From: Fimbriosthenelais zetlandica
Lineage: Eukaryota
NCBI GenBank assembly: GCA_977030845.1
Contig: OZ365115.1
Span: 17,050,001 to 17,114,000, forward strand
Length of the DNA: 64,000 nt
Reading direction: 5' to 3'
The notes beneath the pieces are model-generated. The model was not told the origin of the DNA. It searched no databases and saw nothing but the letters and a program-made list of their open reading frames with translations. A program made the translations under genes and the position numbers. Positions 13,346 through 63,590 of the stretch are shown piece after piece. Each line of letters opens with the position of its first letter. Positions within the stretch are counted from its first letter, which is position 1.

Positions 13346-13622
13346 GTCTCTGCCTATATTACTCCAGTGGGCGGAGCTAACAGGTTCAGTGTGGGGTGAG
13401 ATTACTCGTCAATCTTAATCTGAGAGTGTTTAAGGAAGCAGACATTGGGAGAGGAATCAATCCTAAAATAGCAAGCCTGTAGGTTCAAAAGATAGGGTGA
13501 CGAGAGGATGATTCTACTGGAAAAACGGATCATATCTACAATGTTTTGCATTACATTAGGTCCGTTCTATGAATATTAGGTGTTGAATTCTACTGGCAGA
13601 TGGTTTGGAAAAAACAGAGCAT

Positions 13623-13695
13623 AGGTTCTGCCGGGTTTCGAACCCAGGACCTTTCGCGTGTTAGGCGAACGTGATAACCACTACACTACAGAACC
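13623..13695 (-). tRNA. tRNA-Val(AAC)
   Basis: Minus strand GGTTCTGTAGTGTAGTGGTTATCACGTTCGC-CTAACAC-GCGAAAGGTCCTGGGTTCGAAACCCGGCAGAACC. Full cloverleaf, 7-bp acceptor stem, A and B boxes, oligo-T run ~10 nt downstream. Confidence 0.93.
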
Positions 13696-13790
13696 CTGTG
13701 GTGGGAGAGATTTTCATTACATTGGGTCGGTTCTATGAGTATAAGTTGTGGATTTCTAGTGGCAGGTGGTTGGGAAAAAATGCACAGCAC

Positions 13791-13863
13791 AGGTTCTGCC
13801 GGGTTTCGAACCCAGGACCTTTCGCGTGTGAAGCGAACGTGATAACCACTACACTACAGAACC
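13791..13863 (-). tRNA. tRNA-Val(CAC)
   Basis: Identical to the neighbouring tRNA except the anticodon loop TTCACAC. Downstream T6 terminator (plus strand A run 13775-13780). Confidence 0.93.
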
Positions 13864-39100: not shown

Positions 39101-42100
39101 TGCGACTTGCTTGGCCTGAAAACCCCCAGAGAGAGATATAATATAATTAGATCATTTATTAAATAAAGTGTCCTTTCAAAATTAACAAAAATCCTGTTTA
39201 TCTGTAGGAAAATTCTAGGTTGAATATATATATATAGGTAGAGAGCAGCATTATATTCAGGTGTGATTGATTGATTGATTGATTGATTGAATGGGGTTTA
39301 ACGTCACTTTCAACAATTTTTCAGTTATATCATGACGGTGCCTACTTGTAACAGTGAGCCCAATGCTCTTTTATAGTGCTGTCTTATACTGAGGTATCAT
39401 GCCGCAGGTACCTGACATGATACATCACCCAGTCACATTATACTGACACAGCAATGCGCCATCATTGGGACTTTAATATGGCTTGTGACATTTGACTTTT
39501 AATGATCAGAGTTATGAATCGCTCACCCATTTAGTTCTGTCTCGACCCTGTAGTAGAGCCTCAGCCCGCTCTCGCTCGAGTTGCTCCAGCTCCTCTTTGC
39601 GTCTCTCTTTTCGTTCCTTGACACGGTCGCTGACAGTGGGTGTAGATATGAGACGTAACTTTTCCTGGAGTTCTTTCTGTTTCTCCTCCTGAATTTGCTC
39701 CAATTTGCTCCTCTGCTCCTCTAGCTGCTGCTCTATTAACTCATTAAAGCTAGGCTGCTGCTGCTCCGACTGGCGCTGGTACGCGTAGGCCATCTTAAAG
39801 GCATTACCTACTATGTTGTTTAATTCCTCGGCCTGGGGGAGATAATGAAAAATTATTATAATATAAGACAATAGGTCAAAATGACTATCAGAGACTATAT
39901 TAGAAAATAAAAATTTCTTTTTAAATGATAAAATATATTAATATATAATCAAGTATAAAATAATGAAATGTACCAAGGACTAATTTAAAGGAAATGGTAA
40001 ATTTCTGCAGGGAATTAACAGCAATAATAGGGACTCTAATAAAAATTTTAAAATCGTTCTTTTATTTTTTAAATATGACCAAGGGCTGGATGTGGGGCGG
40101 AATTAGACAAAACTTTTTAAATGGAGTGAATATCTTTATCCGTTCAGAAGTTATCGGGGATTGAACGGCCAAAAAATGGACAAGATTTCTCACTTTTTTA
40201 CTATAGGCCAGCGGAGAAGAAATTGGCACGTCACTGTGTAATGAACGTCTGTTTTTTATTCTGTCACACAAACTTTACTTTCCAACCAATTTTTGTCAAA
40301 TCTTCAACATATATTCAAATTATCTGGTGCTAAATGATTATGCAAGACTATTTGACCTTTGACCTTGGCGTCCCCTCGTAATATGTAGGTTAAAAGTCAG
40401 TTGTTCTAGAGAATCAATGCTAAAGGACTGCTGTTGAATCAGAAATCTAATAACGGCTTTTACTCTTTCATCTTAAAGCTCCATATTCTACATATCTTAA
40501 GCTACGTATAGGTTTTTGTTTCATCGAGATCGACCCGGTAATTGCTTCAGAATTTAAACTTAAATTAACGCTGTTCTCGGACTAAAATTGTTTGGCCTTG
40601 TGGTGGTCTCACAGTGCAGCGGTCATTCACTTTCTGAGTAAGGCCAGAAAGTTGTATTGTTTGTTTCTGGTTCAACGACTGACCATCATAAAATCGCCCA
40701 TAGAATCGTCGACGTCATCGCCATTCTTTACGGGTTTTAGCCCAAAATAAAAAATCTAAAGTCCTGACTCTCCTCTGAAAAATTGAAATCTACGTTGGTC
40801 TTAAAAATGTTATGTGACCTGAAACAGTACTTTTTTGTTTGGCCTAACTGTAGTAAGCTGGGCCGGTGGTCGAAAAATACATAAAGAATCTATTTGGATA
40901 TTACACAGACTGCGCCGGTCCTAATACAATCAAAACCGACATAGACATGGAGTAGAAATGTCGAAAAAGGTGTCTAAACCATCAAAACGAACGGCCCGCT
41001 TATATTTACAGAGATTTCGGCGATTAATTCTCGGCTCGGAGCAGAAGCTCGGCTTGCCTATTGCAGTTTAGTGTATTAGCTTTACAGGTCGGGAAACGTC
41101 AATGTAGAATCTTGCGTTCCATATTTAACGGACTGCGCCGGTCCTAATAGCAATAAAAGTTTCTGATTATGGGGTAAAAATGTCTGAAAAAGCCGCCTAG
41201 ATCATCAAATTGAGCGGCCCGAATAGAATTCTTGAAGATATTTGCGATTGTAAGTTACCCCGTTTTCTCTTGGACAATAGACATAGGAAGGACCTGTCGT
41301 ATTATTATGAAAAAACGACCATCATGTACGTCTATTCGTGTTCTTTCAAATGCGGTAAAATAGAAGTTGATCAGATATGTTGGGACTGAGCAATGCCTCA
41401 AAACGTGAACACTACCAAATCAGTACTGTCAAGTCGCGAGCCAATTTTCACATGCCCAGCTGGGTGAGAATTTGAGCGGTGGATTGCACGCGTTACTAGA
41501 GTCCCTAGCAATAACATTAAACTTAAATTAAAGCTTCTTAAATTTAGCTTAAGAAATAAAATTTAAAACTTTTACAATAATAAATGCCCAGGCTATAAAT
41601 TTTATGGAGTGGCAAGGAGTGACTAATGTATATCACATACCAAGAAAGGAAATAACTTTTGAGTTGAAAACATTTTTTTAAATATTTTGGAAAAATTGTA
41701 GAGTGTAAAAATATAACATTTTACCTGCTCAGGTGAGGTGGTGATGAAGGCGTGACAATACTGGACACTGGTGTGACCCTTTGGTTCCCGAGCCAGAAAG
41801 GAGAATTGTCTATTGTCAGGATCACAGGTGGCATAAGATATACGCTTCAACGCATGGGCCATATATACACTCTGTAAATAAACAAAATCCATTTTTAGTA
41901 ACTGATTATTTAGTGGTTATAGCCGAGAGGTCTTTCTGAATGTGCGCACTACCTAAGGTCAATAATATTATAACAGGTGGTGGAGGGAGATAACCTCTAA
42001 TCGACCAAGTGAGAAAGCAAAGTATCCACTATCTTAGATTGATTATAACAGGTATAGTTGAGGGAGATAACCTCTAATCGACCAAGTGAGAAAGTAAAAT

Positions 42101-45100
42101 ATCCACTATCTTAGATTAATTATAACAGGTAGTTGAGGGAGGTAGCCCCTAATCGACCAAGTGCAAAAGTAAAATATCCACTTCCTTAGATCAATTATAA
42201 CAGGTAGTGGAGGGAGATAGCCTTTAACCGACCAAATGAGAAAGTAAAATATCCACTAACTCTTTACCAGTTAATCGCTTCAACGGCTTGAGGAGTTTCG
42301 GACCCCAAAACAAGAGTCAAAAAGTTTGCAATCTAACCAATTCCCTCCTTAAGGACCTCCACTTCCAATTCCACGATCAAGTCTCTTTCTTAAGATAAAC
42401 CGTTCCTTAAATTTTCCTATATTACACAAAGAAGCAATGCTTTTACCAGCAGAAAACGATAAAAATTCCATATATGTAATTATTACAAACCCTAGTTCCT
42501 TCTATCTTCGGTCCACACCCCAACACAAATGATAAATATCTCAACACAAGAGAGATCTCACACTTAACAGTGATAGTGATGTCATAATAGGTCAACAAGG
42601 TTCCCCGTTCTAAATAACTTCTTGCTGACATCAGATCTGTTCAGGATTTCTTGGATCAGTTTTTCTCCTCAGATAGACAGACACCAAAAGCCACAGAAGT
42701 AATTGGGGTTTTTATTTTATTGCAAAAGAATTTAAATGTACTGGTACATTCCAGAAATGTACTGAAAAAATACTTTTCCCTGAGTCATTTCTTTTCAGGT
42801 ATTATTTGAGTATTACTAAAAATACCAGCATAAGATATAGGTGGAAGGCAATCGTAAATACGGTTATTTTTCAAGAAAATCCTATACCCTTTTATCCAAC
42901 CCACTACCTCATTATACACCCCCCCCCCTCATCGTTCATGGTCCTCACTCCTGTCATCACCTCAGCCCAGCCCAACCAACCCCGCCCCCCATCCCTTTAT
43001 CCCCATGCAACCCTTCAAATCCCACCCATCAACACAAGCTTAATCCATCCCTTCATTATACTGTATTATGTCTGCTGCGTGTATCTTTTCCAATCAGCCT
43101 ACTGGGCAAACACGATCTATAATAGTACATGATCCGACCGCTGGCAACCATTGGACTGTTTGATGAGCAAACAGGAGTGTCGATCGTACGGTCAATTTTG
43201 AAGCACTTCTCTCATCACATCTTTCTCATACTGATCAGTATATATATGAGCATTGCATCCAGGTGACAAGGTGAGTAACTCAGTAAGGTACAATATCCTA
43301 GAGTTATAATACTCCCATTTAAGAAACCGATACTCAACTTTGGTCTAAAAAAAAGAGCCAACAGTGTACAAAATTCATCCAAAAAGGCATTTCTAAGATG
43401 TGAGAAGTTTAGTATAAGATACACGAATTATTATATCGACTCACTGAAGAATAACTTTCTTCTTTCCCCTATTTTTTATTTGTTTTATACTGAGCCGTCG
43501 ACAGTTTAGGTTTTTATTTCGCGAAAAGATCAAACTGCGATTTTCAAAGCTAACAAAGACACTCAAATCATCAATTTAAGATCTGGATCTTCTGCCGCAA
43601 CTGCCACAAGCGTACCTGCCGTTATCAGAGCCTTGCTATTTGCAAATGGCTTGGCAGATATGTACAGTACAGTCTGTTCACTCTAAGTTGATCCGAAACT
43701 ACCATACATATGTACTGTGGTTTCGGATCAACTAAGTGGAAGCCATAGAAAAGTCAACAAAAAGGGCCAGCCGCAACAAAAAGGTAATACTCGGATAGCA
43801 AAAGAACCCCAGTGGAGGGTCCCCATGAACAGTTTCACAGAGGCAAAGTTGGCTAGGTTTGGACAGGTATACATACATGTATATGAAAAGCATTCTAGTG
43901 AGTGTTGATGTTATCTTTGAGTCACTGTATTTTAATGTGACCTGTACGTGCGCACCTGTCGCATAAGTCATTAATGTATGAAAAATCAATATTATTATCT
44001 TTGGAGGGTTTATATCCTAAATTTATACTAGATCTCCTCAAACCCCTACCAAAAGACATCACCAGGAGGCATAATTTCCTCACATTATCACGTGTATGTG
44101 TTTTATCCCTTTGACATAATAACAGATCCATAATCTTCAAATCCCTCTAACCATAACTTGCTAGTTACATAAATGCGCACTATAGGTTACCATACAAGTT
44201 AATCTTCCCCACGCGGAAACATTCACTTTTTATATTGTCCTTTGAAAACTATTAAAGTCCATTGGTGATTGAATATGTATATCAATGAGTGAATTATGTA
44301 CTTAATAATTATGGATGTGTAGTAATAAAGTGGTAATAAAGATTATATTTGCATACCATATGATAGCACCGCATCGCACCAAATGGTTAAAAGATTAATA
44401 AATCAAAATTCACTACTAACTTCCTCTGACCTCTCCTTTTTAAACAATGCCTGTTCCATCCAGTTCGGCATTTGAAATGTATACTTCCTGTTAATTGGCT
44501 GACAAATTATTCTTTCCAGACAGGGAATTGAGGAAGGAGACGAGAAAAATGGCAGGACAGGAGGATCTGAAATATAACAGCCTTAGAAAGGTGACTTATA
44601 TTCTAACATGGTGTACAGCGACCATCTTGTACACCAATCAATGGATACAGGCCTACCGCAAACACCCCGACTACCTCCAGCTCACCGCCTCTCAATTCTC
44701 TATCGCTCTCATCATCCAACTGTTATATCTACTTCTCTACAAGAGAGACAACCACAGAGGAGAGCTCCAAAAATGGCCAAATTTCCTCGAGTCCACAGTC
44801 GTGGGTTTCCTTTTCTTGATTTCAGATTTGTGCCTCACCGCAGCCTTTGTAACTACCCCAGTGGCTGTGGTCTTCACAATCAAACTTCTGGATCCTGGTA
44901 TCAGCAAGATGAGATATGTCAAAGATTATCGCATAGGTTATCTCATAAAGGATCTCTTACCAGTGGCCGTCTTAGTTGCCATAGTAACAGGACTAAACCC
45001 GGGCTTTACAGGAAGTGGCGCCATCTTTGCCACCATTTCACTGGTAACATTTCATTTGGGTCGTAACAGATTGAAGGGTCCAAACCAAACAGTGATTGAA

Positions 45101-51100: not shown

Positions 51101-54100
51101 AGCTGTTGCGAATGTATGCCAATGCAAAACTAGTTATTTCATCTAGAGTACATGTTGCACTTCCTTGTGTAGCCATGGGCACGCCAATCATTTTCTTAAA
51201 CCGAAAAAGCATGTATGGGGCAACAACGAGAAGCCCTTCGGCCAGAGTGTCAGGGTTGTTAGATCTGTTCCATACAGTAGATTGGTATAAGATGACAGAC
51301 GCAGAGATTAAGAACTTCTTACATAACTTTAACTGGGATAATCCACCACCTAATCCAAATCCTGAACTCGCACGCAAGCTGATGAAGACAACCAGGGGGA
51401 TATTAACAAAGGATGACATTATCAAAGATTCCTTGCACATGTACTATGATTTTATTGCTAATCATTATTGAGTTGGAAATTTACATTAATTATTTTATTT
51501 TCAATAAAACTATAATTTAATTATAATTTGTAAAGACAAAATAATACACTAAGCACGGAAGAGTGGCATATCTCTGGACATTTTCTGCGCATTTTAGATC
51601 CATATATGAGAAAAACCATGCACAGAAAAAAAGCTATATAAAATATTTTATATTGCTGATGAGCTATTAAGACGAAATTTATGAGGCGTAACCATATAAT
51701 TATCGAACAAACATCATGGGTGTTTCATTGAGGGATTACTTACGACGCCTGAAGATGCGAAAAGACAGTTCAGAATAGAATTGTGAATTATTGGAATGTA
51801 CTATTTATTATTTTTATAAATGACATACTTAATTAGCCTCTTTGTTCTCGTGTATCGATGAATGCGGACGATACTGCCTTTGTTTTGATAGATGACGACC
51901 TAAACAATTTGTACAATTTAATGCAAAACGATACTAAGCAATTTTCGTCCTGGTGTGCTAATACTGGTTTAAAAATTAATAGTAAACAATCCTTCTCACA
52001 AATAAATTGTAAGAAATCTCTGAAAGGTGTTGTCAATTCATGTAATTGTAAACTCAAGTGTAATAATGACGAAATAGTTTTAAAACGCACTGTAACATAC
52101 CTTGGAATTAAATTAGACTGGATCGGAGTACAGCCATATTGGTGCTAAAGACCTTCCTCCTACCTATCCTTGATTTCGGTATTAAAAAAATGGAGAAGAA
52201 ATATCTGGAAATAGATTTCACTCGGATGACTTGGTATACATAGAGGACGACACAAATGTATATAAAATGTAACCCAGTGCCCCAGTGGCACACGCTGGCA
52301 ACTTGTCACACATGGCTAATCCCTGGGTCACCCAGTCCATCCATTAGAAACTCTGCTATCTTGGGCTAGGGTCTCCATTTAATAATTTCCTGGCAAATAA
52401 CTTTTTCACGATCTGGCAATGATACCGGAAATGACGGGAAGTGGGAATCTGAAATATAACAGCCTACAGGTGACTTATATTCTAACATGGTGTACAGCCA
52501 CCATCTTGTACACCAATCAATGGACCCAAGCCTACCACAAACACCCCGACTACTTCCAGCTCACCGCCTCTCAATTCTTCCTCGCTCTAGTCATCCAACT
52601 GTTCTATATACTTCTATACAAGAGAGACAACCAGAGAGCAGAGCCCCCAAAATGGCCGAATTTCCAGATCTCAGTCGTAAGCATCCTTTTCTTGATTTCA
52701 GATTTGTGCCTCACCGCAGCCTTTGTAACTACCCCAGTGGCTGTGGTCTTCACAATCAAACTTCTGGATCCTGTTATCAGCAAAATTAGATGCATCAAAG
52801 ATTGTCTCATAAAGGAGGTATTACTAGTGGCCATCTTAGTTGCCATAGCAACAGGACTAAACCCGGGCTTTACAGGAAGTGGCACCATCTTTGCCATCAT
52901 TTCACTGGTAACATTTCATTTGAGTCGCATCAGACTGAAAGATCCAAATGCAGTAGTGAATGAAAATTCCAAAAAGACCGGATGTGTAAAATTTAACTTC
53001 CTTCCAAGATATGAAGTTGTTATTTTCATGACATTGTTGACTGGTAGTTTACTGGGTGTCGCTGGTGTTTTGATCCATGGACAAATCAATGCAAATTTCT
53101 GCCATGCCATCAGACCGCAAGTGGCTTGGTTGGCACTCTACTTTTTCATCCAAAAGAATATGTCTTTATTGGTCTATATGGGGACGAGCAGGTCATACTC
53201 TGGAACGATCAGTAGCCTACAAACTGTCTCAATAATCCTGGCAAGCACTTACTTACAGGGAAATGCAGTCTCTGTCCTATCAACATTGGTAACTTGGGCT
53301 GCTGTCCTAGTGGTCTGCCTGCAGGACTCAGATCGGAAAAGGGAAAACAGATCTCAGATGACGACAGATTCTTCTGATTTTTCATATGGATCTGTTCTGA
53401 TGTCTACACTGAAGTTCGCCAGATTTCTAGCTATCACATTTCTAATCTACCTTGCAGTCTTCCATATCTGCAGAAATAGCCAGAGAAAACCACCAACAAT
53501 ACGTGTGGCTTGGACCTTTACAGAAAAGATATCGGACGCATATCTGAACAACCTTTTGAATGTACAACATAGTTTTCCTGGCTCAACAATGGAAGTTTTC
53601 TGTTCAAATGAAGCCTGTATGAAATCTGTAGCCACCATGAGCAGTACACAGGATGTCAAGGCTTCTCGTTTACAGATTTTTGACTTGACAAATGGCACTC
53701 CTTTACATCAGTGGGTCTCCAGACATCCAATATTGAAAATTCAGGCAGGGCCTCACTATGAGAGACACTTACAAAAGGTGCTGCAATTAGCGCTTCAATG
53801 GAAGTACGGTGAAATTGTAGTGGATGCCAATATAAAAATAACTCATATGCAAGCATTTGAAACCGAAGTCAGGAAAATGGATGGCAATGTATGCTACAAT
53901 GGAAATAACCTGCCTTTAGCATTGTGCTACACTGAAAAATCAGGTCATCCGTTTATAAGACATCTGATGACGAATTTTGTTGACAGCTATGAAATCAAGG
54001 GTCCGACAATGTGGCCTTCTAAATGGCAATGGAAATCCGAAAGAGACATTTGGCCTCATGACTTTAATTTTAATAACTTTGTCAACAACTATTCACTTGC

Positions 54101-57100
54101 TTGTACAAGTCCTTGTACCAGAATTCCAATAATACATGCGCAAGAGAGCTTAGAATTAGATCCTGTCTTAAATAGTAAGAAATTTGCCCTAATACGATAC
54201 TACCGTACCGACAATATAGGGGATGAAGTTCAAAGCTTGGCTGCAGCACATGTTTTGCCTCGGGTTGACCATTTCATACAAAGAGACAATGCAATAACTA
54301 TACCAGCCGAAAATGTTGTACTTATAACTAATGCATTTTGGCCAAAAGAAGGGGTAATTTTCCAATCGCCTAACACTGTTAAGCCTCTATTAGTGGCAGT
54401 TCATTTGGATGATACAGAAGAAGGATTGGAAGCCCGAGTTACAAAAGCCAAGGAGTATTTCATAAAACATGGGCCTGTTGGAACAAGAGACACCAACTCC
54501 TTGAATATTTTAAATTCGCTTGGAATTCCAGCTCTATTCAGTGGCTGTATGACATTGTGGATTCAAAACCCATTTGGTCATAAACTACCCAGGGGGAACG
54601 AGATATATGTTGTGGACGTAGTGAGGGGACAAGAGCCATTACTTCCTGAATTTGTTAGAAAAAATGGCGTCTTCTTAAAACACATCAGGGGGTTTCCAGA
54701 TAATCACCAGGTAAAATTTCGCATAGGAGAAGAACTGCTACGAATGTACGCACAGGCAAAAGTAGTGGTGACAGCTCACATACATGTGGCACTTCCCTGT
54801 GTAGCCATGGGCACGCCAGTCATTTTCTTCAATCGAAGAAACTTGGTGGGTGCCTCCAGTAAAAAACCCTCAGCCAGAGTGACTGGGTTGTTAGATCTGT
54901 TCCATACAGTAGATTGGTATAAGATGACAGACGTAGAAATTAAGAACTACTTACATAATTTTAATTGGGATAATCCACCACCTAATCCCAATGCAGAAAA
55001 TGCAAAGGAGATGATGAAGACAATGAGGGGCATGTTAACAAAGGATGACAGTATCAAAAATTCTATAGATATGTACTATGGTTTTTAGTGTGTATATGAC
55101 TTGTATACATGTATACATGTTTATGGTGACATAAATTTGCCCGCGTGCTACGTGGCAAAGGGGATGAATCACTTTATTATTAATTTAACTGCACGATTTT
55201 GATTATTATTATTATACGCTAGTAGTTACGCTTGAAAGCTTCCATGGGTCGATTCATCTGAAGAATTCACCAAGAATTCGGAAATTCTCCCCGAGTTCAG
55301 GTCGTTGATTCTCTTGAAATAACGTTATATATTTATCTTCAATTCATGAAGATCTATGCAACTCCGTTTTTTTTCTTCTAAGAAAACTAATTAATCCATG
55401 ACAAGATCTTCGAACTTGGACTACCTAGGTGAGTTGGCATGGACCAACTACCATGATAATAGTTGGTGAATGGATTGAATGCCATCTATTTTTTTACATG
55501 TTAATTAATGATCATTACATGTTAATTGTAACTTTGTTTAAACAATTTTTGAAAACGAATAAAGTTATTCTCTCATTGTTTTTCTATATCCGACCTAAAT
55601 CATACAAAGTTCCCACTACATATTAGTCATAAGCAGGTTATAATGCACTATACACTGCTTGTCCCATATATATATGAGATGCACGGATGCAATCAATGGT
55701 GATTTAACGCCATGCATGGATGCATCGTTCTCGCTGACACACATAGGTTGGAAAAAACCTTTTCCTTGACTTTTCGATGTAGTATGGCAACCCTATACAT
55801 ATTGGTTCTGAAAACATCCCCTAGGGTGGAGACAGTCGAAGTTTATGAATACAAATTTTATTTTTATCTAGTCCGTATAGTTAATAACAATACGGACTAC
55901 TGTAGTCCCGTATATTTAATAATAATACGGACTGCATTATTCATAGTGACGGCCTCTTTCTTGAATTTCTCAGCAAAAACAAAAGAAAATCGGTGCAACT
56001 AAGAAGCCTGGAGAATCACCGGCGAATGACTGAGTGCTGCCCTCTTTCAAAACCCAATGGTACTAAACTAAACTCATCACGTTCTCATATGGGACCAGTT
56101 ACTTTCACTATAATATATACAATCAAGTAGATATAATATGAATGTATGTATACATAGGCCTACTGAATTTGTGTAAGATGTAAATTCTATACCATGACAT
56201 TTAGGGACGTTTTGAAGGGCATAATTATATTAAGGTCTAACTATAATCAGTTGACTTCTACTTTTCCATCATCATTATTAATCGTCGTAAGTCCTCGAAA
56301 AATCATAATTTCATTTCGGAATTTTTTCACTGTGTCTGTGACTGTCACACATTAGTTTCATTGACACCGATTGCAATAAATTATCCTTCCTTTAACATCC
56401 TTTGTCCTGTCACATGTTCTCCGTGTCAGCATTTGATCAATGAATATATGTGACGAAATAAACAAAGAATACAAAATTACAAAAATGGGACTGTCTCGGT
56501 AAGTATCTGTCCTGATTAAAACCAAAGAGAAATCTCGAATACAGAGCCTATAAAAGGGCCTGGCAAATACAATATATTATCATTGGCGTGAGAGAGAAAA
56601 AAACAGTGTCATAAGCTTCAGAAAGCTAATCCCAGACGCAAGGGTCGATATGAATTATCTCATAAATCCAGCGCCTGCAGACAAGCCTCTGTTGTCTTTG
56701 TGTGCGGGATTATCTTAGAGGATTAACGAGAAAGTGTATATACATGTACGTCTCTATGGCTGGTGTACTATCTGTCTAAGGCCTAAAGTCAAAATTAGCA
56801 TAAAGCTGTATACGGGCCAGGCCCAATTAATATTAATGGGTTTTTGTCTTTTGTATTTTTCACTATCTATGAATTTCCTGTGAACATTTATACGCATAAA
56901 GCTATACATTCTGTTCACTCTAAGTTGATCCGAAACTACCATACATATGTACTGCGGTTTCGGATCAACTTATAGAGTGAACAGACTGTAGGATAATATT
57001 AGGACCATCAATGCTGCTAGTGTCTTTGGCACCATTATAATTGAACATTTAAAAAAAACAATACATGTATGCTTGGTGTATGAATATGAAAAATGCATTT

Positions 57101-59526
57101 CAAAAATGTGGCTGTAATACATCTTATGCATATGCCTATATATAAAGCTTCCACTCCCCAAAATGGGTTTTTGCCTGAAGAAATGCACCCTCCACCATTC
57201 CGTAAGGCCATAAATGCCAGGCGATCATCCAATATTAACAACTCCTCTATTATCGACCATAACACTGTATTATCGCTCAACCTCCACAGCGTCATCTATA
57301 TGAATCAGGAGACTTCCGGGACCAGTTGTAAGTCAACTTTACACCATTTTTAAATCCTAGGGGAGGTATAGAGCTGAGTGGCACACATTACTGGATTAGG
57401 GTGTGGGTGCTTTACTCACTTCGCCCATAGAAGATGAGCTATTGCTATGGGTTTTTAAGGCGACAAAATGTGTGGGAAAAAATAGTGTAGCTTGAGAGCT
57501 TGGCTTCTGAGGAGGGGAAAGGTGGTAGCGGATGAAATTTGTGATAATTTATTCAGATTATGGACAATGTAGCGAGTTCAGACTGCCAGCCATGCACTGA
57601 GAGGTCCATACCAGTTTAAATGGACCCATGTTCAAATCAAGCAAAACTTACTTTCCCAAAATGATTGGGAAATATATAATAGAAGCAATTAGAGATGGCG
57701 ATTCTAGCTCCCCCACTTTCCGCTCCGCTCCAGGCCTCACCCAATGGACAGAAGAACTTTCATTCAAGAAAGCATTGCAAAATATTTTTTTAAAAAAACG
57801 TCAACAAAACAAAATACCTTACTTATAGACAATAATGAAACAGAATGCAATAATACTTTCTTAATTATTGTTCATTTTCCTGAAAAAAAATAGGAAATAG
57901 TAGAACAAAAATCAATTTAAATCTTGCCTACTCACCTCGCCATTACTACTGCAGACTTTAATACCAGATAACGATATGACTAACAATACGGGCTTTGTCC
58001 GAGTCTGTCCCTGAAAGCAAAAAAACAAATTCATTGAAATGTTTTGGTTTCTAGCAATTTATTCTACTTTTATAACTTAGTTTCCTGAAGAAAACAAATG
58101 CATTGCAATTTTTTTTAGAGGAAATAGGCCAATTGTGAATCAAACTGGCATAATTAATATAAACATTGGCCCAACAAAGGCATCACGTCACCAAAACTAT
58201 AGCATTACCATGGGGTGATATATAACCCTACTGACAAAAACCATACACCCAACCAGGGGCACAGAGAATCAATAACCAATGAAAAGCCGCCATGAGGCGA
58301 GAAGCCACAAGTCTATCTAACAAGCCTGCCCATTGGCTGAGCCCCATCACATGATCTCTTAATCTGCTTGATGATTGGCCGCATAGCGGGCTGGACAAGA
58401 TCAAACGCTGGTGCTCCCCTCTGGTGTCACAAGAAGGAACATGGACAGGTCAATATGACGCTCACATGACAATAACACTATCAAGTACACATTTGCATAG
58501 TTCCCATGGCAACCCGGCTAAAAGGGCCAATCAATAAGAGTCTGTTGGCGATATTAAATTGACGTTTTCTGATCATTGGAGGGGAGGGGGGGCAGGGGCT
58601 GGGAGAGGGAGGATTTGTAAAATATTCAATACTTTTTGCATACACACAGTGTTTTGACACTCAATCCATCAAAGAATGCTCTAATTTGTATACCTTTGGG
58701 TATTGATTTTTTCATTTATACAATATTGCCCACAGAGGCGCTCTACAATGATGATCACTTCAATAACAGATTCTTAAATTTTCACACTCTCGGAAATACC
58801 AGCAAAGTTATATTAGCCTTAATTAACAAAATACACCCAAGTATCTCGAACTGAAAATATTTTCGGTTCCACAATGATGAACACTCCCAAAACAGGCTCT
58901 TAGATTTCCACACTCTCAAAAATACCAGCAACTTTTAGCAATAGATATGACACCCAAATCTTGAACCGAAAATCATTTGGTTCCACAATGATGGCACTCT
59001 TAGATTTTCATACTCAAAAATGTTAACAGAGAGAAGAGTTATGAAATAAAGGTTTAATTATCAGTCATCTATAATTAAGGAATAATTGATACATAGGTGA
59101 TTTTATTTAATTCTGTACCTCCTCATCCGTCAGCATTTACACCTTTCAATGAAAACTCCAGATTAGTTCCATTCCCGGGAGGGTGAGGGCGCCACCGGTC
59201 TGACCAGAGAATCTGTCGGCGGCCAATCAGGGATCAGTAGGTCAAATGACTACCCCTTAGTATGATGTCACTACCGGTTAGGGCTTTATCATTCATTCGT
59301 AGGGGTTACATGACCATTAGGTCTATATTATTTATTAAATCGGCAAACCTGTTCTCCGTGTGTATTTTACTGGGGTTGGCCTACATGCATAAATTTATAT
59401 TTACCAATAAAAGATGGCTTTAAATATTATTGTGAAAGGACTTACCCTCATCTCGGCTAACTGTGTTCGAACATACTCCGCTCGAGAATTTTGGTCCTCC
59501 CCCACCACGGAGAAAGATCCAATATA
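35781..59526 (-). CDS. SH2D5: SH2D5-like PTB-domain adaptor, partial spliced model: join 59526-59446, 58010-57936, 41871-41725, 39832-39527, 39115-38777, 36106-35781
   Basis: All junctions GT-AG and in frame (phase 0 x5, last donor phase 2). Spliced protein YIGSFSVVGEDQNSRAEYVRTQLAEMR-GQTRTKPVLLVISLSGIKVCSSNGE-SVYMAHALKRISYATCDPDNRQFSFLAREPKGHTSVQYCHAFITTSPEQ-AEELNNIVGNAFKMAY matches my recollection of the SH2D5 PTB (YVGSF...LKFSLQGLKIYS...MAHALRRI...FAFMAR...FCHLF). Start codon and SH2 exons not found. Confidence 0.8.
37150..37510. repeat. (GGAA)n / GA-rich tract
   Basis: Directly visible. Confidence 0.9.
38545..38749. mobile_element. ~200-bp foldback MITE, copy 1
   Basis: Long imperfect inverted arms (tgcgacaaaggtgatgctt... 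/ ...aagcatcacctttgtcgca); related copy at 63398-63590. Confidence 0.65.
38777..39115 (-). CDS. SH2D5: SH2D5-like exon (113 codons)
   Basis: Acceptor GGTTTTCAG|GCC, donor GAG|GTGAGT, open frame AKQVAGKSKHK...DDDSNE. Confidence 0.8.
39527..39832 (-). CDS. SH2D5: SH2D5-like exon (PTB C-terminal helix + coiled coil, 102 codons)
   Basis: Acceptor CTCCCCCAG|GCC, donor TGG|GTGAGC; GNAFKMAY helix followed by an E/Q/K/R-rich coiled coil. Confidence 0.88.
40075..41490. mobile_element. Probable non-autonomous repeat element with an internal ~90-bp duplication
   Basis: CpG-richer block; gactgcgccggtcctaata...catcaaa...cggccc occurs at 40908 and 41131. Ends and class not resolved. Confidence 0.35.
41725..41871 (-). 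CDS. SH2D5: SH2D5-like exon (PTB core, 49 codons)
   Basis: Acceptor TTTATTTACAG|AGT, donor CAG|GTAAAA; MAHALKRISY...YCHAF. Confidence 0.9.
41968..42258. repeat. ~75-bp tandem repeat, 4 copies
   Basis: Unit ttataacaggt...gagggagataacctctaatcgaccaagtgagaaagtaaaatatccact... starting at 41968, 42043, 42120, 42195. Confidence 0.93.
43271..44519 (+). other. Putative 5'-UTR intron of pyruvyltransferase-fusion copy 1
   Basis: Consensus donor AAG|GTGAGT at 43271; branch-like CTGAC near 44499 and acceptor TTATTCTTTCCAG| ending 44519, 29 nt before ATG 44549. Confidence 0.45.
43668..43733. mobile_element. Tc1/mariner-type hairpin MITE, right end truncated
   Basis: TA-CAGTCTGTTCACTCTAAGTTGATCCGAAAC...GTTTCGGATCAACT; 59/60 identical to 56911-56970. 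Confidence 0.6.
44549..47254 (+). CDS. TPT/SLC35E-like transporter + degenerate GT32 + polysaccharide pyruvyltransferase fusion, copy 1 (901 aa from first ATG)
   Basis: Single open frame. ~10 hydrophobic segments with DMT/TPT-like signatures (WCTATILYTN, LTASQF, VFTIKLLDP), extra TM at 45566-45622, GT32-like LALLWKYGEIVVDAN and HPFIRHLMTNFV, pyruvyltransferase motifs NFGDEIQSLA, GPVGTRD, FCGCMTL, AKLVITGRIHVALPCVALGTPV. AATAAA at 47608. Confidence 0.85.
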   Translation: MAGQEDLKYNSLRKVTYILTWCTATILYTNQWIQAYRKHPDYLQLTASQFSIALIIQLLYLLLYKRDNHRGELQKWPNFLESTVVGFLFLISDLCLTAAFVTTPVAVVFTIKLLDPGISKMRYVKDYRIGYLIKDLLPVAVLVAIVTGLNPGFTGSGAIFATISLVTFHLGRNRLKGPNQTVIENLEPQKMNSKLNFFGSCGDEVVIFMTLLTGSLLGVAGVLIHGQINANFCHTIRPQVAWLALYFFIQKNMSLLFYMGTTRSYSGTISSLQTVSIILASTFLQRNAVSVLSTLVTLAAVLVVCLQDFLGKKSDQEGERTSQITTDSSTFSSTRSTVRFVRFLAVTFLIYLAVLHTCNTKTGSLKKGEGPPTIRVAWTFTENISDAHLKNFLNIQHSFPGSKMEIFCSNEACMKSVATMSSTQDVKASRLQIFDLTNGTPLHQWVSRHPILKIQAGPHYERHLQKVLQLALLWKYGEIVVDANIKITHMEAFETKVRKMDGNVCYNGNNLPLALCYTEKSGHPFIRHLMTNFVASYQIKGPTVWPSKWQYKQDIWPYDFDFTNFVDNYSHNCTHPCTKIPIKNTSPSLALDRVLKRKKIALLSYTTTNFGDEIQSLAVAHLLPRVDYLIQRENPKTIPAEDVVLVTNAFWTHKGILFQSPNSIKPLLVSVHLNNIIKGIESKVTKSKEYFIKHGPVGTRDTNTLKIFKSLGIPAVFCGCMTLWIKNPFDYGHPRGNKIYIVDIQGSPKQLLPNSIIKNAKVLQHSLGTPRGSQVRFRVAEELLRMYAQAKLVITGRIHVALPCVALGTPVIFLNKKTLYGATSESPSARVTGLLDLFHTVDWYKMTDVEIKNFLHNFNWDNPPPNPNPELARKLMKTTKGMVTKDESIKNAMDMYYDFNA
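47729..47808. mobile_element. 80-bp perfect-hairpin MITE with 2-bp (AT) TSD
   Basis: CCCAGCAGGCACAAGACGTCTTCACAACGTCT / AGACGTTGTGAAGACGTCTTGTGCCTGCTGGG perfect inverted repeat, 16-nt spacer, AT on both sides. Confidence 0.7.
48042..48246 (-). pseudogene. Inverted, internally deleted relic of a further fusion-gene paralogue (GT32-like region)
   Basis: Minus strand reads LQILTYGIPSYKWVSRHP, then FVASYQFKGPSVSPYELIFKREIWSYDFNFTVFVDNYSHN*, collinear with LQIFDLTNGTPLHQWVSRHP and FVASYQIKGPTVWPSKWRYKKDIWPYDFNFTNFVDKYSHNC. Confidence 0.85.
48805..51471 (+). CDS. Transporter + degenerate GT32 + pyruvyltransferase fusion, copy 2 (888 aa)
   Basis: Same architecture and motifs (NIGDEIQSLA, GPVGTRD, SSRVHVALPC). 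AATAAA at 51503. Confidence 0.85.
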   Translation: MTRSGNLKCSSLQVTYILTWCTATILYTNQWIQAYHNHPDYLQLTASQFSITLTIQLFCLLLYKRDNHRGELQKWPNFLESTVVGFLFLISDLCLTAAFVTTPVAVVFTIKLLDPVISKMRYVKDYLIGYLIKELLPVAILVAIATGLNPGFTGSGTIFATISLVTFHLGRIRLKDPNTGVNENSKKTGCEKLNCLPRYEVVIFMTLLTGSLLGVAGVLIHGQINANFCHAIRPQVAWLALYFFIQKNMSLLVYMGTSRSYSGTISSLQTVSIILASTYLQGNAVSVLSTLVTWAAVLVVCLQDSDRNLRENRSQTTTNSSDFSYGSGLMSTLKFARFLAITFLIYLAVFHICRNSQGKPPTIRVAWTFTEKISDAHLNNLLNVQHSFPGSTMEVFCSNEACMKSVAIISSAQDVKASRLQIFDLTNGTPLHQWVSRHPILKIQAGPHYERHLQKVLQLALLWKYGEIVVDANIKITHMEAFETEVRKIDGNVCYNGNNLPLALCYTEKSGHPFIRHLMTNFVASYQIKGPTVWPSKWRYKKDIWPYDFNFTNFVDKYSHNCTNQCTGIPIKNSSITFDKVLKGQKFALLCYSSDNIGDEIQSLAAAHVLPRVDYFIQRDNPKTIPAENVVLIANGFWPKEGILFQSPNTIKPLLVAMHLDNIIKVIESKVTKSKEYFIKHGPVGTRDINSLKIFHSLGIPAVFSGCMTLWIRNAFGHEQPRENKIYIVGSSEPLLPQSVRKNAIYLTHTVNFPNNKYERFRVAEELLRMYANAKLVISSRVHVALPCVAMGTPIIFLNRKSMYGATTRSPSARVSGLLDLFHTVDWYKMTDAEIKNFLHNFNWDNPPPNPNPELARKLMKTTRGILTKDDIIKDSLHMYYDFIANHY
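51801..52118 (+). mobile_element. Decayed LINE reverse-transcriptase fragment, same clade as 18186-20960
   Basis: LFIIFINDILN*PLCSRVSMNADDTAFVL...WCANTGLKIN...TVTYLGIKLD aligns with LFIIFVND...YADDTAFVL...WCDKNGLMIN...TVLYLGIKID; in-frame stop and YADD changed to NADD. Confidence 0.8.
52419..55088 (+). CDS. Transporter + degenerate GT32 + pyruvyltransferase fusion, copy 3 (889 aa; ATG 52431 aligns with copy 2 start)
   Basis: Same architecture; NIGDEVQSLA, GPVGTRD, TAHIHVALPC. AATAAA at 55558. Confidence 0.85.
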   Translation: MIPEMTGSGNLKYNSLQVTYILTWCTATILYTNQWTQAYHKHPDYFQLTASQFFLALVIQLFYILLYKRDNQRAEPPKWPNFQISVVSILFLISDLCLTAAFVTTPVAVVFTIKLLDPVISKIRCIKDCLIKEVLLVAILVAIATGLNPGFTGSGTIFAIISLVTFHLSRIRLKDPNAVVNENSKKTGCVKFNFLPRYEVVIFMTLLTGSLLGVAGVLIHGQINANFCHAIRPQVAWLALYFFIQKNMSLLVYMGTSRSYSGTISSLQTVSIILASTYLQGNAVSVLSTLVTWAAVLVVCLQDSDRKRENRSQMTTDSSDFSYGSVLMSTLKFARFLAITFLIYLAVFHICRNSQRKPPTIRVAWTFTEKISDAYLNNLLNVQHSFPGSTMEVFCSNEACMKSVATMSSTQDVKASRLQIFDLTNGTPLHQWVSRHPILKIQAGPHYERHLQKVLQLALQWKYGEIVVDANIKITHMQAFETEVRKMDGNVCYNGNNLPLALCYTEKSGHPFIRHLMTNFVDSYEIKGPTMWPSKWQWKSERDIWPHDFNFNNFVNNYSLACTSPCTRIPIIHAQESLELDPVLNSKKFALIRYYRTDNIGDEVQSLAAAHVLPRVDHFIQRDNAITIPAENVVLITNAFWPKEGVIFQSPNTVKPLLVAVHLDDTEEGLEARVTKAKEYFIKHGPVGTRDTNSLNILNSLGIPALFSGCMTLWIQNPFGHKLPRGNEIYVVDVVRGQEPLLPEFVRKNGVFLKHIRGFPDNHQVKFRIGEELLRMYAQAKVVVTAHIHVALPCVAMGTPVIFFNRRNLVGASSKKPSARVTGLLDLFHTVDWYKMTDVEIKNYLHNFNWDNPPPNPNAENAKEMMKTMRGMLTKDDSIKNSIDMYYGF
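56905..56990. mobile_element. Tc1/mariner-type hairpin MITE, complete, TA-flanked
   Basis: TA-CA(T)TCTGTTCACTCTAAGTTGATCCGAAAC...GTTTCGGATCAACTTATAGAGTGAACAGACTG-TA. Confidence 0.65.
57936..58010 (-). CDS. SH2D5: SH2D5-like exon (PTB beta strands, 25 codons)
   Basis: Acceptor TTTTGCTTTCAG|GGA, donor GAG|GTGAGT; KPVLLVISLSGIKVC. Confidence 0.9.
58276..58579. promoter_or_regulatory. CCAAT-box-rich promoter-like region with an X-box
   Basis: CCAAT/ATTGG at 58276, 58332, 58374, 58527, 58575; GTTCCCATGGCAAC 58500-58513; G-rich tract immediately after. Confidence 0.4.
59446..59526 (-). CDS. SH2D5: SH2D5-like exon (PTB start, 27 codons)
   Basis: Acceptor TTTTATTTCAG|TAT, donor AGG|GTAAGT; YIGSF motif. 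Confidence 0.9.
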
Positions 59527-63397: not shown

Positions 63398-63590
63398 AAA
63401 GCCCGGTCTCCACTGCTGCGATTTTGCTTGCGACACTACTGCTACAAAGATGATGTCGCAAATATGACAAATATATCAGTGGAAGACAATGGACGCTTCG
63501 ACCACAATTTGTACAATGTTATTGCGACACAAGCATCATTTTTATCGCAGTAGTATCTCAAGCAAAATCGCAGCAAAGGAGGACTGACCT
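63398..63590. mobile_element. ~200-bp foldback MITE, copy 2
   Basis: Arms aagcccggtctccactgctgcgattttgcttgcgac... and ...tgcgacacaagcatca...gcaaaatcgcagc match the 38545-38749 element. Confidence 0.6.

What the first reader, a model, noticed from the sequence alone, without database searches (positions are those of the whole stretch)
41872..57935. Three uninterrupted 2.7-kb genes nested antisense in the intron that splits the PTB domain
Seen: the host has 75-339-bp exons and long introns, while the three nested plus-strand ORFs have no coding introns and lie between two exons of the same domain. Inference: the founder arrived by retroposition or lateral transfer and then expanded in tandem. 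The PS-pyruvyltransferase family is mainly known from bacteria, fission yeast and giant viruses, whereas the TPT-like and A4GALT-like parts look eukaryotic, so the gene would be a chimera. Eukaryotic flanks, polyA signals and a probable UTR intron argue against contamination.
Basis: partly seen in the sequence, partly recalled or inferred. Interest (0 to 1): 0.7.

Follow-up and report, generated by a model that had tools for sequence, protein, structure and literature searches.

The report
Old tandem pyruvyltransferase genes inside an intron
Three intact, intron-free genes for a transporter-like + glycosyltransferase-like + pyruvyltransferase protein do lie antisense in a 16-kb intron of a PTB-adaptor gene. 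They belong to an old animal-wide family whose coding region is normally one exon, so nothing points to a recent retrocopy or bacterial transfer.

Summary
Three uninterrupted + strand ORFs (44549-47254, 48805-51471, 52419-55088; 888-901 aa) lie in a 16,064-bp phase-0 intron (41872-57935). The flanking minus-strand exons (75 bp and 147 bp) have canonical splice sites and encode consecutive parts of a PTB/PID domain.

Tandem expansion is real but old: dS is 0.5-0.8 in the pyruvyltransferase third. The 5' 1.7 kb has been homogenised by gene conversion (dS about 0.1). dN/dS is 0.2-0.76.

Retroposition or transfer into this locus has no support:
- There is no A-tract at any 3' end.
- The genome holds no intron-bearing parent. 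It has two more intact intron-free paralogues and three pseudogene loci.
- Two of the pseudogene loci are 96% DNA-level copies of gene 1 plus its 3' spacer.

The same architecture occurs in a starfish (whole CDS one exon) and a soft coral (core one exon). On the pyruvyltransferase tree all multidomain proteins form one clade (support 99), apart from named prokaryotes. The fusion is therefore ancient; a deep bacterial origin of the pyruvyltransferase part remains possible.

The likely job is PEP-dependent pyruvylation of glycans in the Golgi. In this genome's copies the transporter's phosphate-binding Lys-Arg and the GT32 DXD motif are lost.

The scan noted the same stretch under three other titles.

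The parts
44549..47254 (+). Gene 1 (W1), 901 aa from the first ATG; the open frame starts at a TTG at 44495. Architecture: TPT-like 10-TM domain, TM linker, GT32-like middle domain, pyruvyltransferase.
   Evidence: ORF. PF04230 E 7e-13. Source of the 96%-identical C14 pseudogene copies.
48805..51471 (+). Gene 2 (W2), 888 aa, used as the reference copy. Domains: TPT-like aa 1-315 (48805-49749), TM helix aa 326-355, GT32-like aa 358-560 (49876-50484), pyruvyltransferase aa 586-888 (50560-51468).
   Evidence: ORF. PF04230 E 7.7e-14. AF2 model with pLDDT 79.9. Folds: TPT 5y78 with TM 0.77 and Pvg1p 5ax7 with TM 0.50; SLC35E1/PPT.
52419..55088 (+). Gene 3 (W3), 889 aa. His replaces the nearly invariant Arg of the R-x-H motif.
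   Evidence: ORF. PF04230 E 1.8e-10. The motif is read from the translation against the invariant columns.
48039..48415 (-). Decayed inverted fragment of a fourth copy (about aa 428-565 of the protein), lying in the spacer between genes 1 and 2.
   Evidence: blastn 80.7-82.5% to 46145-46279 and 50368-50493. tblastn-type hit to aa 522-568. ORF remnants. Also carried by the C14 copy.
41872..57935 (-). Host intron (16,064 bp, phase 0) that contains the cluster.
   Evidence: Splice sites and in-frame join.
57936..58010 (-). Host exon A (75 bp), upstream part of the PTB/PID domain.
   Evidence: AG acceptor, GTGAGT donor and continuous frame with exon B.
41725..41871 (-). Host exon B (147 bp), PTB/PID profile positions 73-116.
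   Evidence: Pfam PF00640 E 3e-4, 21.2 bits. Weak PDB hits to the ANKS1B and ARH PTB domains.
39521..39832 (-). Host exon C: end of the PTB domain plus a Glu/Gln/Lys-rich coiled coil. This PTB-plus-coiled-coil layout resembles GULP/CED-6.
   Evidence: Acceptor CCCCAG| and donor |GTGAGC, with translation. The GULP/CED-6 resemblance rests on my own knowledge and was not tested.
51858..52148 (+). Reverse-transcriptase fragment (retroelement debris) in the spacer between genes 2 and 3.
   Evidence: 96-aa ORF with an ...ADDTA... motif. Identified by eye only.
43668..43736 (.). 69-bp palindromic dispersed repeat. A second copy at 56905-56990 lies on the other side of the cluster.
   Evidence: 97% match between the two copies. 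At least 1316 candidate copies genome-wide, so these are not the ends of a composite element.

Best explanation
The three ORFs are an old, DNA-level tandem array of one lineage-specific branch of an ancient family. That family is widespread in animals and other eukaryotes, and its coding region is normally a single exon. Each protein has a 10-helix TPT/SLC35-like membrane domain, one more membrane helix, a GT32 (A4GALT/Gly_transf_sug)-like domain without the DXD motif, and a PS_pyruv_trans ketal-pyruvyltransferase.

The array happens to sit antisense in a long phase-0 intron of a PTB-adaptor gene, as many nested animal genes do. It most likely got there by DNA-based duplication or transposition of a family member, then duplicated in place. 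Since then it has been partly homogenised by gene conversion over the 5' 1.7 kb and kept under purifying selection.

Inferred mechanism (not shown): by analogy with fission-yeast Pvg1p and its PEP transporters Pet1p/Pet2p, the luminal C-terminal domain transfers pyruvate from PEP to a terminal sugar of Golgi glycans or glycolipids. In most family members the fused transporter domain would import PEP. In this genome's copies that domain has lost the TM9 Lys-Arg that binds phosphate in TPT. It may therefore now serve mainly as a membrane scaffold or carry a different substrate.

The transporter-pyruvyltransferase fusion is ancient. Whether the pyruvyltransferase part came from bacteria long ago is left open.
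For: Anatomy and tandem arrangement.

Age and gene conversion (mosaic also): dS among the three copies is 0.12-0.15 in the TPT domain, 0.07-0.19 in the middle domain and 0.53-0.76 in the pyruvyltransferase domain. dN/dS is 0.23-0.76 in these three domains. The spacers between copies no longer align.

Family within this genome:
- intact intron-free paralogues at C1:5443082 (894 aa, 63% identity) and C22:3277802 (1002 aa, 40% identity);
- pseudogenes on C14 (two) and at C1:67.62 Mb;
- no intron-bearing parent.

DNA-mediated dispersal: the C14 copies are 95.7-95.8% identical to window 44601-47352. One continues into the 3' spacer at 47903-48148, including the relic fragment.

No A-run of 8 or more lies within 600 nt 3' of any copy.

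Family outside this genome:
- The exhaustive search gave 2868 hits. The full-length ones are 32-34% identical and are encoded as single ORFs on Mb-scale eukaryote-like contigs.
- Named animal members are LOC110980597 of Acanthaster planci and LOC124446788 of Xenia sp..
- The starfish CDS is one 3465-bp exon. The coral has one 449-bp intron after aa 1088.

Pyruvyltransferase-domain trees: the five own paralogues are monophyletic (98-99). With the 850-909-aa relatives they form a clade (99). All proteins that contain the middle domain form one clade (99 in both FastTree and IQ-TREE), apart from 26 named prokaryotes and the standalone enzymes.

Folds and motifs:
- N-terminus matches TPT 5y78 (TM 0.77) and the C-terminus matches Pvg1p 5ax7 (TM 0.50).
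- The best Swiss-Prot fold hits are SLC35E1, PEP/phosphate translocators and S. pombe C83.11.
- The invariant pyruvyltransferase columns include the GxRD Arg and the His of R-x-H. These appear to be the PEP-binding residues of CsaB/Pvg1p (PMC10435577); I matched them by motif, not by structural alignment.
- The middle domain is homologous to the extra C-terminal GT32 domain of the long forms, and 2 of 20 members hit PF04488.

Literature: Pvg1p uses PEP imported by Pet1p/Pet2p (PMC6801904). Pyruvylated glycans are known from Aplysia glycolipids and from a sponge (PMC6994554, PMC6801904).
Against: - No expression data: no RNA or DNA run was listed for this sequence. Transcription, the UTR intron and the polyA sites are therefore unverified.
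- How the founder entered the intron cannot be read after this much divergence. An old retrocopy would by now have lost its A-tail and target-site duplications.
- Synteny in related species could not be examined.
- Pfam does not detect TPT or GT32 in the window proteins themselves at E <= 0.1. Those two assignments rest on homologues and on the predicted fold.
- The TM9 Lys-Arg that binds phosphate in TPT (bioRxiv 10.1101/169169) reads Leu-Gln here, which weakens the PEP-import step for these copies.
- Gene 3 has His in place of the Arg of R-x-H.
Confidence: 0.75

Rival explanations
1. Retrogene founder: a processed mRNA of a family member was reverse-transcribed into the PTB-gene intron, acquired a promoter, and then duplicated in tandem.
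For: The CDS is uninterrupted in an intron-rich genome. Retroelement debris lies in the same intron. Similarity among copies, and to paralogue C1a, begins only about 10-57 nt before the ATG and ends at the stop codon.
Against: - The family's CDS is single-exon in a starfish and in many other eukaryote contigs, so lack of introns is ancestral and carries no information here.
- The genome holds no intron-bearing parent.
- No A-tract lies 3' of any copy.
- The only datable dispersal in the family carried intergenic DNA.
- Similarity confined to the CDS is expected at dS 0.5-0.8 combined with gene conversion.
Confidence: 0.1
2. Recent lateral transfer: the gene, or its pyruvyltransferase part, entered this lineage from a bacterium or giant virus and landed in this intron.
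For: PF04230 is mainly prokaryotic. Standalone prokaryotic enzymes are 31-42% identical to the C-terminal domain, close to the 34-48% seen with eukaryotic multidomain relatives.
Against: - The C-terminal domains of all multidomain proteins form one clade (support 99), apart from 26 named prokaryotes.
- Homologues with the same architecture occur in a cnidarian and an echinoderm.
- The N-terminal domain has a eukaryote-type TPT/SLC35 fold.
- GC and GC3 are about 0.41, like the surroundings.
- The viral collection gave only one hit, and it covered the pyruvyltransferase domain alone.
Confidence: 0.03
3. Deep-origin variant, compatible with the best explanation: an early eukaryote acquired a bacterial pyruvyltransferase, possibly already fused to a GT32-like domain, and joined it to a TPT-type transporter. 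Animals then inherited the fusion vertically with many losses, or passed it between eukaryotes.
For: - The Atlas lists bacterial clusters of 557-611 aa with Caps_synth/Gly_transf_sug plus PS_pyruv_trans as the nearest feature matches to residues 356-888 (score 0.96).
- AFDB entries of 528 and 765 aa align over residues 355-869.
- AFDB also holds 1177-1257-aa 'sugar phosphate transporter' and 'pyruvyl transferase' entries that align over residues 1-879. From memory of the accessions these belong to stramenopiles. The organism column was withheld, so this is unverified.
Against: - A profile of the middle domain found nothing in 80 bacterial pyruvyltransferase ORFs, in 5 of their genomes, or in 201 genomes of a cyanobacterial-phylum sample.
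- The trees are unrooted, so the direction of any transfer is not shown.
Confidence: 0.45
4. Assembly artefact or contaminant contig joined to animal DNA.
For: None found. No reads could be laid.
Against: - Host exons with canonical splice sites lie on both sides.
- Animal-type repeats and RT debris lie inside the intron.
- Composition is even.
- Further copies sit on three other contigs of the same assembly, among them 96% copies of gene 1.
Confidence: 0.02

Closest known systems
Schizosaccharomyces pombe Pvg1p with the Golgi PEP transporters Pet1p/Pet2p
   Same: The C-terminal domain is a PS_pyruv_trans family member with the Pvg1p fold (5ax7). It keeps the invariant columns that include the GxRD Arg and the His of R-x-H (residue roles from PMC10435577). 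The N-terminal domain has the TPT/SLC35 fold, and S. pombe transporter C83.11 is among its Swiss-Prot fold hits. The functional logic is the same: a PEP carrier plus a luminal pyruvyltransferase (PMC6801904).
   Different: Here both activities sit on one polypeptide with a GT32-like domain in between. Sequence similarity to Pvg1p is not detectable by phmmer. In this genome's copies the transporter lacks the TM9 Lys-Arg. No activity has been shown.
Uncharacterised animal TPT + PS_pyruv_trans proteins: LOC110980597 of Acanthaster planci, LOC124446788 of Xenia sp., and an Atlas cluster that is mostly Mollusca
   Same: They share the domain order and align full-length. The pyruvyltransferase domain is 34-36% identical. 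The coding core is a single exon. All fall in the same clade of the pyruvyltransferase tree.
   Different: Those proteins are 1150-1175 aa, carry a further GT32/Gb3_synth-like domain at the C-terminus, and keep the transporter Lys-Arg (checked in Acanthaster). The window genes belong to a shorter branch of 850-909 aa without that domain.
Prokaryotic standalone ketal-pyruvyltransferases (CsaB, WcfO and similar; about 300-350 aa)
   Same: 31-42% identity to the C-terminal domain, with shared invariant residues.
   Different: They have no membrane or GT32-like domains and lie on the other side of a branch with support 99. They act on lipid-linked cytoplasmic intermediates (PMC6801904).
Nested intronic genes and single-coding-exon Golgi glycosyltransferase genes of animals
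   Same: The cluster is an antisense nested unit inside a long intron. Each gene has an uninterrupted CDS and possibly a 5' UTR intron. From my own knowledge this is usual for many type II glycosyltransferase families, A4GALT among them.
   Different: Here the nested unit is a three-gene array. It also served as the source of pseudogene copies on another contig.

Membership tests
PS_pyruv_trans (PF04230) ketal-pyruvyltransferases | Profile match above the curated threshold | tested here: met
   41.6-52.7 bits against a cut-off of 25.3 for all three genes.
PS_pyruv_trans (PF04230) ketal-pyruvyltransferases | Pvg1p-type double Rossmann-like fold | tested here: met
   AF2 model with pLDDT about 90 in this part. 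Foldseek hit to 5ax7 with E 6.7e-4 and TM by target 0.50.
PS_pyruv_trans (PF04230) ketal-pyruvyltransferases | PEP-binding Arg (CsaB R148) and the R-x-H motif (CsaB R306/H308) | tested here: met
   The GxRD Arg and the His are invariant across 25 aligned sequences, including all three genes. The Arg of R-x-H is kept in genes 1 and 2 but is His in gene 3. Residue roles come from PMC10435577. The correspondence was judged by motif, not by structural superposition.
PS_pyruv_trans (PF04230) ketal-pyruvyltransferases | PEP-dependent pyruvyl transfer to a sugar | not testable with these tools
   Needs an enzyme assay.
TPT / SLC35 (PF03151, DMT 10-TM) phosphate or nucleotide-sugar translocators | Profile match | tested here: not met
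   No TPT or EamA hit at E <= 0.1 for the window proteins. Full-length homologues P0001, P0004, P0017 and P0018 do hit PF03151 and PF00892.
TPT / SLC35 (PF03151, DMT 10-TM) phosphate or nucleotide-sugar translocators | 10-TM DMT fold | tested here: met
   Ten helices in the model. 5y78 with TM by target 0.77. SLC35E1, PPT and TPT are the top Swiss-Prot fold hits.
TPT / SLC35 (PF03151, DMT 10-TM) phosphate or nucleotide-sugar translocators | Phosphate-binding Lys (TM4) and Lys-Arg (TM9) of plastidic phosphate translocators | tested here: not met
   The TM4 Lys is kept. The TM9 Lys-Arg reads Leu-Gln in genes 1-3 and in C1a, and Leu-Arg in C22. Most other family members keep Lys-Arg. Residue roles come from bioRxiv 10.1101/169169. 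Positions were matched by motif.
GT32 / Gly_transf_sug (PF04488), A4GALT-like | Profile match | tested here: inconclusive
   The window's middle domain matches no family. 2 of 20 aligned middle domains hit PF04488 (best E 4.5e-6). The middle domain is homologous to the extra C-terminal domain of the long forms, which carry PF04488 and PF04572.
GT32 / Gly_transf_sug (PF04488), A4GALT-like | DXD metal/nucleotide-sugar motif | tested here: not met
   The window proteins read ...KYGEIVVDAN..., and the family consensus has a single D.
Processed retrogene | An intron-bearing parent gene from which the introns were lost | tested here: not met
   All intact paralogues in the genome are uninterrupted. 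The one split locus is a disrupted pseudogene. Relatives in other animals are single-exon as well.
Processed retrogene | Poly(A) remnant at the 3' end and target-site duplications | tested here: not met
   No A-run of 8 or more within 600 nt of any stop codon. Target-site duplications were not searched for specifically and are unlikely to survive at this divergence.
Horizontally acquired gene (recent) | Nested within a donor clade and absent from related animal lineages | tested here: not met
   The genes sit in one clade with other multidomain eukaryotic-type proteins (support 99). The family is present in Cnidaria and Echinodermata.
Nested intronic gene | Lies wholly inside an intron of a host gene whose flanking exons splice in frame | tested here: met
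   for the splice sites and frame. for the PID match. Splicing itself was not observed, because no RNA data were listed.

The most novel reading that the evidence does not exclude
This family is the so far unidentified animal glycan or glycolipid pyruvyltransferase, the enzyme behind the pyruvate ketals reported in sea-hare glycolipids and sponge proteoglycan. It is built as a one-chain 'import PEP and use it' machine. In this lineage the transporter (Lys-Arg lost) and the GT32 domain (DXD lost) have both become non-catalytic scaffolds, while the pyruvyltransferase third diversifies among tandem copies to act on different acceptors.
Probability: 0.35. Interest if true: 0.6.

Novelty: new member of a known kind. 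Interest (0 to 1): 0.35.

Why it matters
The claim as posed, a freshly arrived retrocopy or bacterial chimera caught in an intron, would have been a notable case of gene birth. The evidence shows an ordinary history instead: an old single-exon family, DNA-level duplication, gene conversion and chance nesting.

What remains of value is the family itself. I found no paper in the searchable library that describes an animal pyruvyltransferase or a transporter-pyruvyltransferase fusion. Yet the family is present from cnidarians to echinoderms and lophotrochozoans. It gives glycobiologists concrete candidate genes for animal glycan pyruvylation. It also offers a natural contrast between copies with and without the phosphate-binding Lys-Arg, which can be used to test whether the fused transporter is needed.

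Tried and rejected
- The word-based homologue search found nothing with the whole protein or with the middle domain. This is a sensitivity limit, not absence: the exhaustive search found 2868 relatives.
- Sequencing runs: none was listed for the 4-kb stretch or for gene 2 alone. Read laying was therefore not used, and expression, splice sites and assembly continuity stay untested.
- I considered the two 69-bp palindromic repeats flanking the cluster (43668-43736 and 56905-56990) as ends of a mobile unit. Rejected: the repeat is genome-wide, with at least 1316 candidates, and it is not a tRNA.
- Bacterial GT32+pyruvyltransferase fusions as direct ancestors of the middle+C-terminal module (Atlas lead). 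The middle-domain profile hit nothing in 80 bacterial pyruvyltransferase ORFs, in 5 of their genomes, or in a 201-genome sample of one phylum; the two 20-bit matches there are at chance level. Left open, not confirmed.
- Giant-virus or phage vector: one viral contig carried a pyruvyltransferase-only match.
- Conserved nesting: no PTB exons lie within about 8 kb of family members in other assemblies or beside the other paralogues. This is weak evidence, because the flanks are shorter than the intron.
- Accession look-ups in papers for the source assemblies found nothing.
- A sequence search of the PDB with the pyruvyltransferase domain found nothing. Only the fold search did.
Full report
**1. 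Observation**

The window holds three + strand ORFs of 2.7 kb with no internal stop: 44495/44549-47254, 48805-51471 and 52419-55088. They are head-to-tail copies, 82.6-86.7% identical in nucleotides, spaced about 4.2 and 3.6 kb apart.

Two short exons with canonical splice sites bracket them on the minus strand:
- 58010-57936 (75 bp; ...TTTCAG| and |GTGAGT)
- 41871-41725 (147 bp; ...TTACAG| and |GTAAAA)

They join in frame at phase 0. The second exon matches Pfam PID/PTB profile positions 73-116 of 140, just above the curated cut-off, so the domain is indeed split by the 16,064-bp intron 41872-57935. The next exon (about 39832-39521) ends the domain and runs into a coiled coil. From my own knowledge this PTB-plus-coiled-coil layout is that of GULP/CED-6 adaptors; I did not test that name.

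**2. What the genes encode**

Pfam sees only PS_pyruv_trans in the last 300 residues. An AlphaFold model built on 35 homologues (mean pLDDT 79.9) shows four parts:
- ten membrane helices, whose best solved match is the triose-phosphate/phosphate translocator (5y78, TM 0.77);
- an eleventh helix;
- a GT-A-like middle domain;
- a C-terminal domain matching yeast pyruvyltransferase Pvg1p (5ax7, TM 0.50).

Against Swiss-Prot models, the N-terminal part is most like SLC35E1, plant PEP/phosphate translocators and a fission-yeast transporter.

The middle domain is homologous to a second, C-terminal domain carried by longer relatives. That domain hits Gly_transf_sug and Gb3_synth, and two of twenty middle domains hit Gly_transf_sug directly.

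The middle domain lacks a DXD motif. The invariant columns of the pyruvyltransferase domain include the Arg and His that, by motif, correspond to residues shown to bind PEP in CsaB/Pvg1p (PMC10435577).

**3. History inside this genome**

The genome holds at least eight loci of the family on four contigs:
- the three genes in the window;
- two further intact, uninterrupted genes (C1:5443082, 63% identical; C22:3277802, 40% identical);
- three pseudogene loci.

None has coding introns. The one split locus is interrupted by 4.6 kb and also carries a frameshift. So there is no intron-bearing parent from which a retrocopy could have been made.

The two pseudogenes on contig C14 are 95.7-95.8% identical to gene 1 from 52 nt inside its CDS to 98 nt past its stop. 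One of them continues into gene 1's downstream spacer, including a decayed inverted fragment of a fourth copy (48039-48415). That dispersal carried intergenic DNA and so was DNA-mediated, not a processed transcript.

No A-run of eight or more lies within 600 nt downstream of any of the three genes.

**4. Age and mode of the tandem array**

Similarity among the three copies stops almost exactly at the start and stop codons. This looks odd at first but is explained by divergence. Synonymous divergence by domain:

| Region | dS among the three copies |
|---|---|
| Pyruvyltransferase third | 0.53-0.76 |
| Transporter domain | 0.12-0.15 |
| Middle domain | 0.07-0.19 |

Within the 5' part there are sharp mosaic blocks in which different pairs of copies are 95-99% identical. 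That is the signature of an old duplication with ongoing gene conversion over the 5' 1.7 kb. Neutral spacers of that age would no longer align.

dN/dS is 0.21-0.34 in the pyruvyltransferase domain, 0.24-0.63 in the middle domain and 0.45-0.76 in the transporter domain. All three genes are therefore under constraint, least so in the transporter part.

A short, weakly conserved stretch upstream of the ATG is shared with paralogue C1a.

**5. History outside this genome**

An exhaustive profile search found 2868 relatives. The best are only 32-34% identical, but they align end to end and are encoded as single ORFs on Mb-scale, gene-poor contigs next to reverse-transcriptase and SET-domain genes. 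These are eukaryotic genomes. Another relative sits next to a second family member in tandem.

Two relatives carry names: an uncharacterised protein of the starfish Acanthaster planci and one of the soft coral Xenia sp.. The starfish CDS is a single 3465-bp exon in an annotated genome whose neighbouring gene has introns. The coral gene has one 449-bp intron after residue 1088, beyond the shared core.

The Atlas places the nearest named cluster mostly in Mollusca. AFDB lists further entries whose gene symbols I remember as brachiopod (Lingula) and whose accessions I remember as stramenopile; the organism column was withheld, so these are leads only. Notes by other agents of this scan call the genome 'probably annelid'; I did not test that.

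The family is thus broadly distributed in animals, and its single-exon core is ancestral.

**6. Trees**

I built trees from the pyruvyltransferase domain of 182 sequences with FastTree, and of a 78-sequence subset with IQ-TREE under a site-heterogeneous model. Both show the same structure:
- The genome's five intact paralogues are one clade (98-99).
- They join the 850-909-aa relatives in a clade (99).
- All proteins with the middle domain form one clade (99), separate from 26 named bacteria and archaea and from the standalone 300-aa enzymes, one of which sits in a clearly bacterial gene neighbourhood.

The trees are unrooted. They exclude a recent transfer into this lineage but cannot say whether the eukaryotic clade descends from a bacterial gene.

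The Atlas points to bacterial proteins that already combine a GT32-like and a pyruvyltransferase domain. A profile of the middle domain found no such relative in the bacterial samples I could search. The viral collection gave one pyruvyltransferase-only hit.

**7. Likely mechanism**

In fission yeast, Pvg1p adds pyruvate from PEP to galactose caps in the Golgi, and PEP is imported by the transporters Pet1p/Pet2p (PMC6801904). A protein that joins a PEP/phosphate-translocator-like domain to a luminal pyruvyltransferase fits that logic on one chain. Pyruvate ketals are known from sea-hare glycolipids and a sponge proteoglycan (PMC6994554, PMC6801904). I found no paper naming the animal enzyme.

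There is a caveat specific to this genome. In the solved translocator, phosphate is held by Lys204, Lys362, Arg363 and Tyr339, and mutating them greatly reduces exchange (bioRxiv 10.1101/169169). Most family members keep the matching TM4 Lys and TM9 Lys-Arg. All five paralogues here have Leu in place of the TM9 Lys, and four have Gln in place of the Arg. Together with the higher dN/dS of this domain, this suggests that the transporter part no longer carries a phosphate ester here and may serve as a membrane scaffold. The correspondence of positions rests on motif alignment, not on a structural superposition.

**8. Verdict**

The nested, antisense, intron-free three-gene array is real. Its explanation is ordinary: an old tandem array of a family whose coding region is normally one exon, sitting in a long intron. 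Retroposition at this site cannot be strictly excluded after so much divergence, but nothing supports it. Recent lateral transfer and misassembly are disfavoured. The fusion is a genuine chimera of a eukaryote-type transporter fold and a prokaryote-like enzyme, but an ancient one. The family deserves experimental attention as the candidate animal pyruvyltransferase. That is the subject of a sister finding on the same stretch, whose follow-up I have not seen.

Noticed in passing
window 49597-49602 (gene 2, aa 265-266) and the equivalent positions in genes 1 and 3; also L006 and L008: The TM9 Lys-Arg of the transporter domain binds phosphate in the solved TPT. It reads Leu-Gln in genes 1-3 and in the C1 paralogue, and Leu-Arg in the C22 paralogue. 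Most relatives in other organisms keep Lys-Arg, so the loss is lineage-specific.
   Followed up: partly
window ~54770-54790 (gene 3, motif ...VVTAHIHVALPC...): Gene 3 has His where genes 1 and 2 and over 90% of aligned pyruvyltransferases have the Arg of the R-x-H PEP-binding motif.
   Followed up: no
G000:C14:2344136-2346499 and C14:292826-295472 (L004, L005): Two 5'-truncated pseudogene copies, 96% identical to gene 1, share flanks with each other. One includes gene 1's 3' spacer but has a deletion matching window 47353-47902. This is a recent DNA-level export from the cluster to another contig, followed by a second duplication there.
   Followed up: partly
window 43668-43736 and 56905-56990: A 69-bp palindromic (foldback, MITE-like) repeat with well over a thousand candidate copies in the genome, many of them in clusters on C14, C19, C21, C30 and C39.
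   Followed up: partly
window 47729-47808: An 80-bp, nearly perfect inverted repeat (hairpin) in the spacer after gene 1. It lies inside the stretch that is missing from the C14 copy.
   Followed up: no
window 38547-38749 and 63399-63581; L006:749-961; L009:2754-2963: A roughly 200-bp dispersed repeat occurs twice in the window. One copy overlaps the 3' end of a minus-strand ORF at 38678-39049 that could be mistaken for a host exon. The same repeat lies about 0.5 kb upstream of both C1 paralogues.
   Followed up: no
L017:2531-5848 and 13566-13848: In another organism's contig, two TPT+pyruvyltransferase genes (1105 and 1133 aa) lie 8 kb apart on the same strand. Tandem arrays of this family are therefore not unique to this genome.
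   Followed up: no
L102:8001-10946 (P0037) and P0163, P0166-P0168, P0149: Other branches of the family join the GT32-like and pyruvyltransferase domains to Glyco_transf_8 or GT2/GalT domains instead of a transporter. The family is modular.
   Followed up: no
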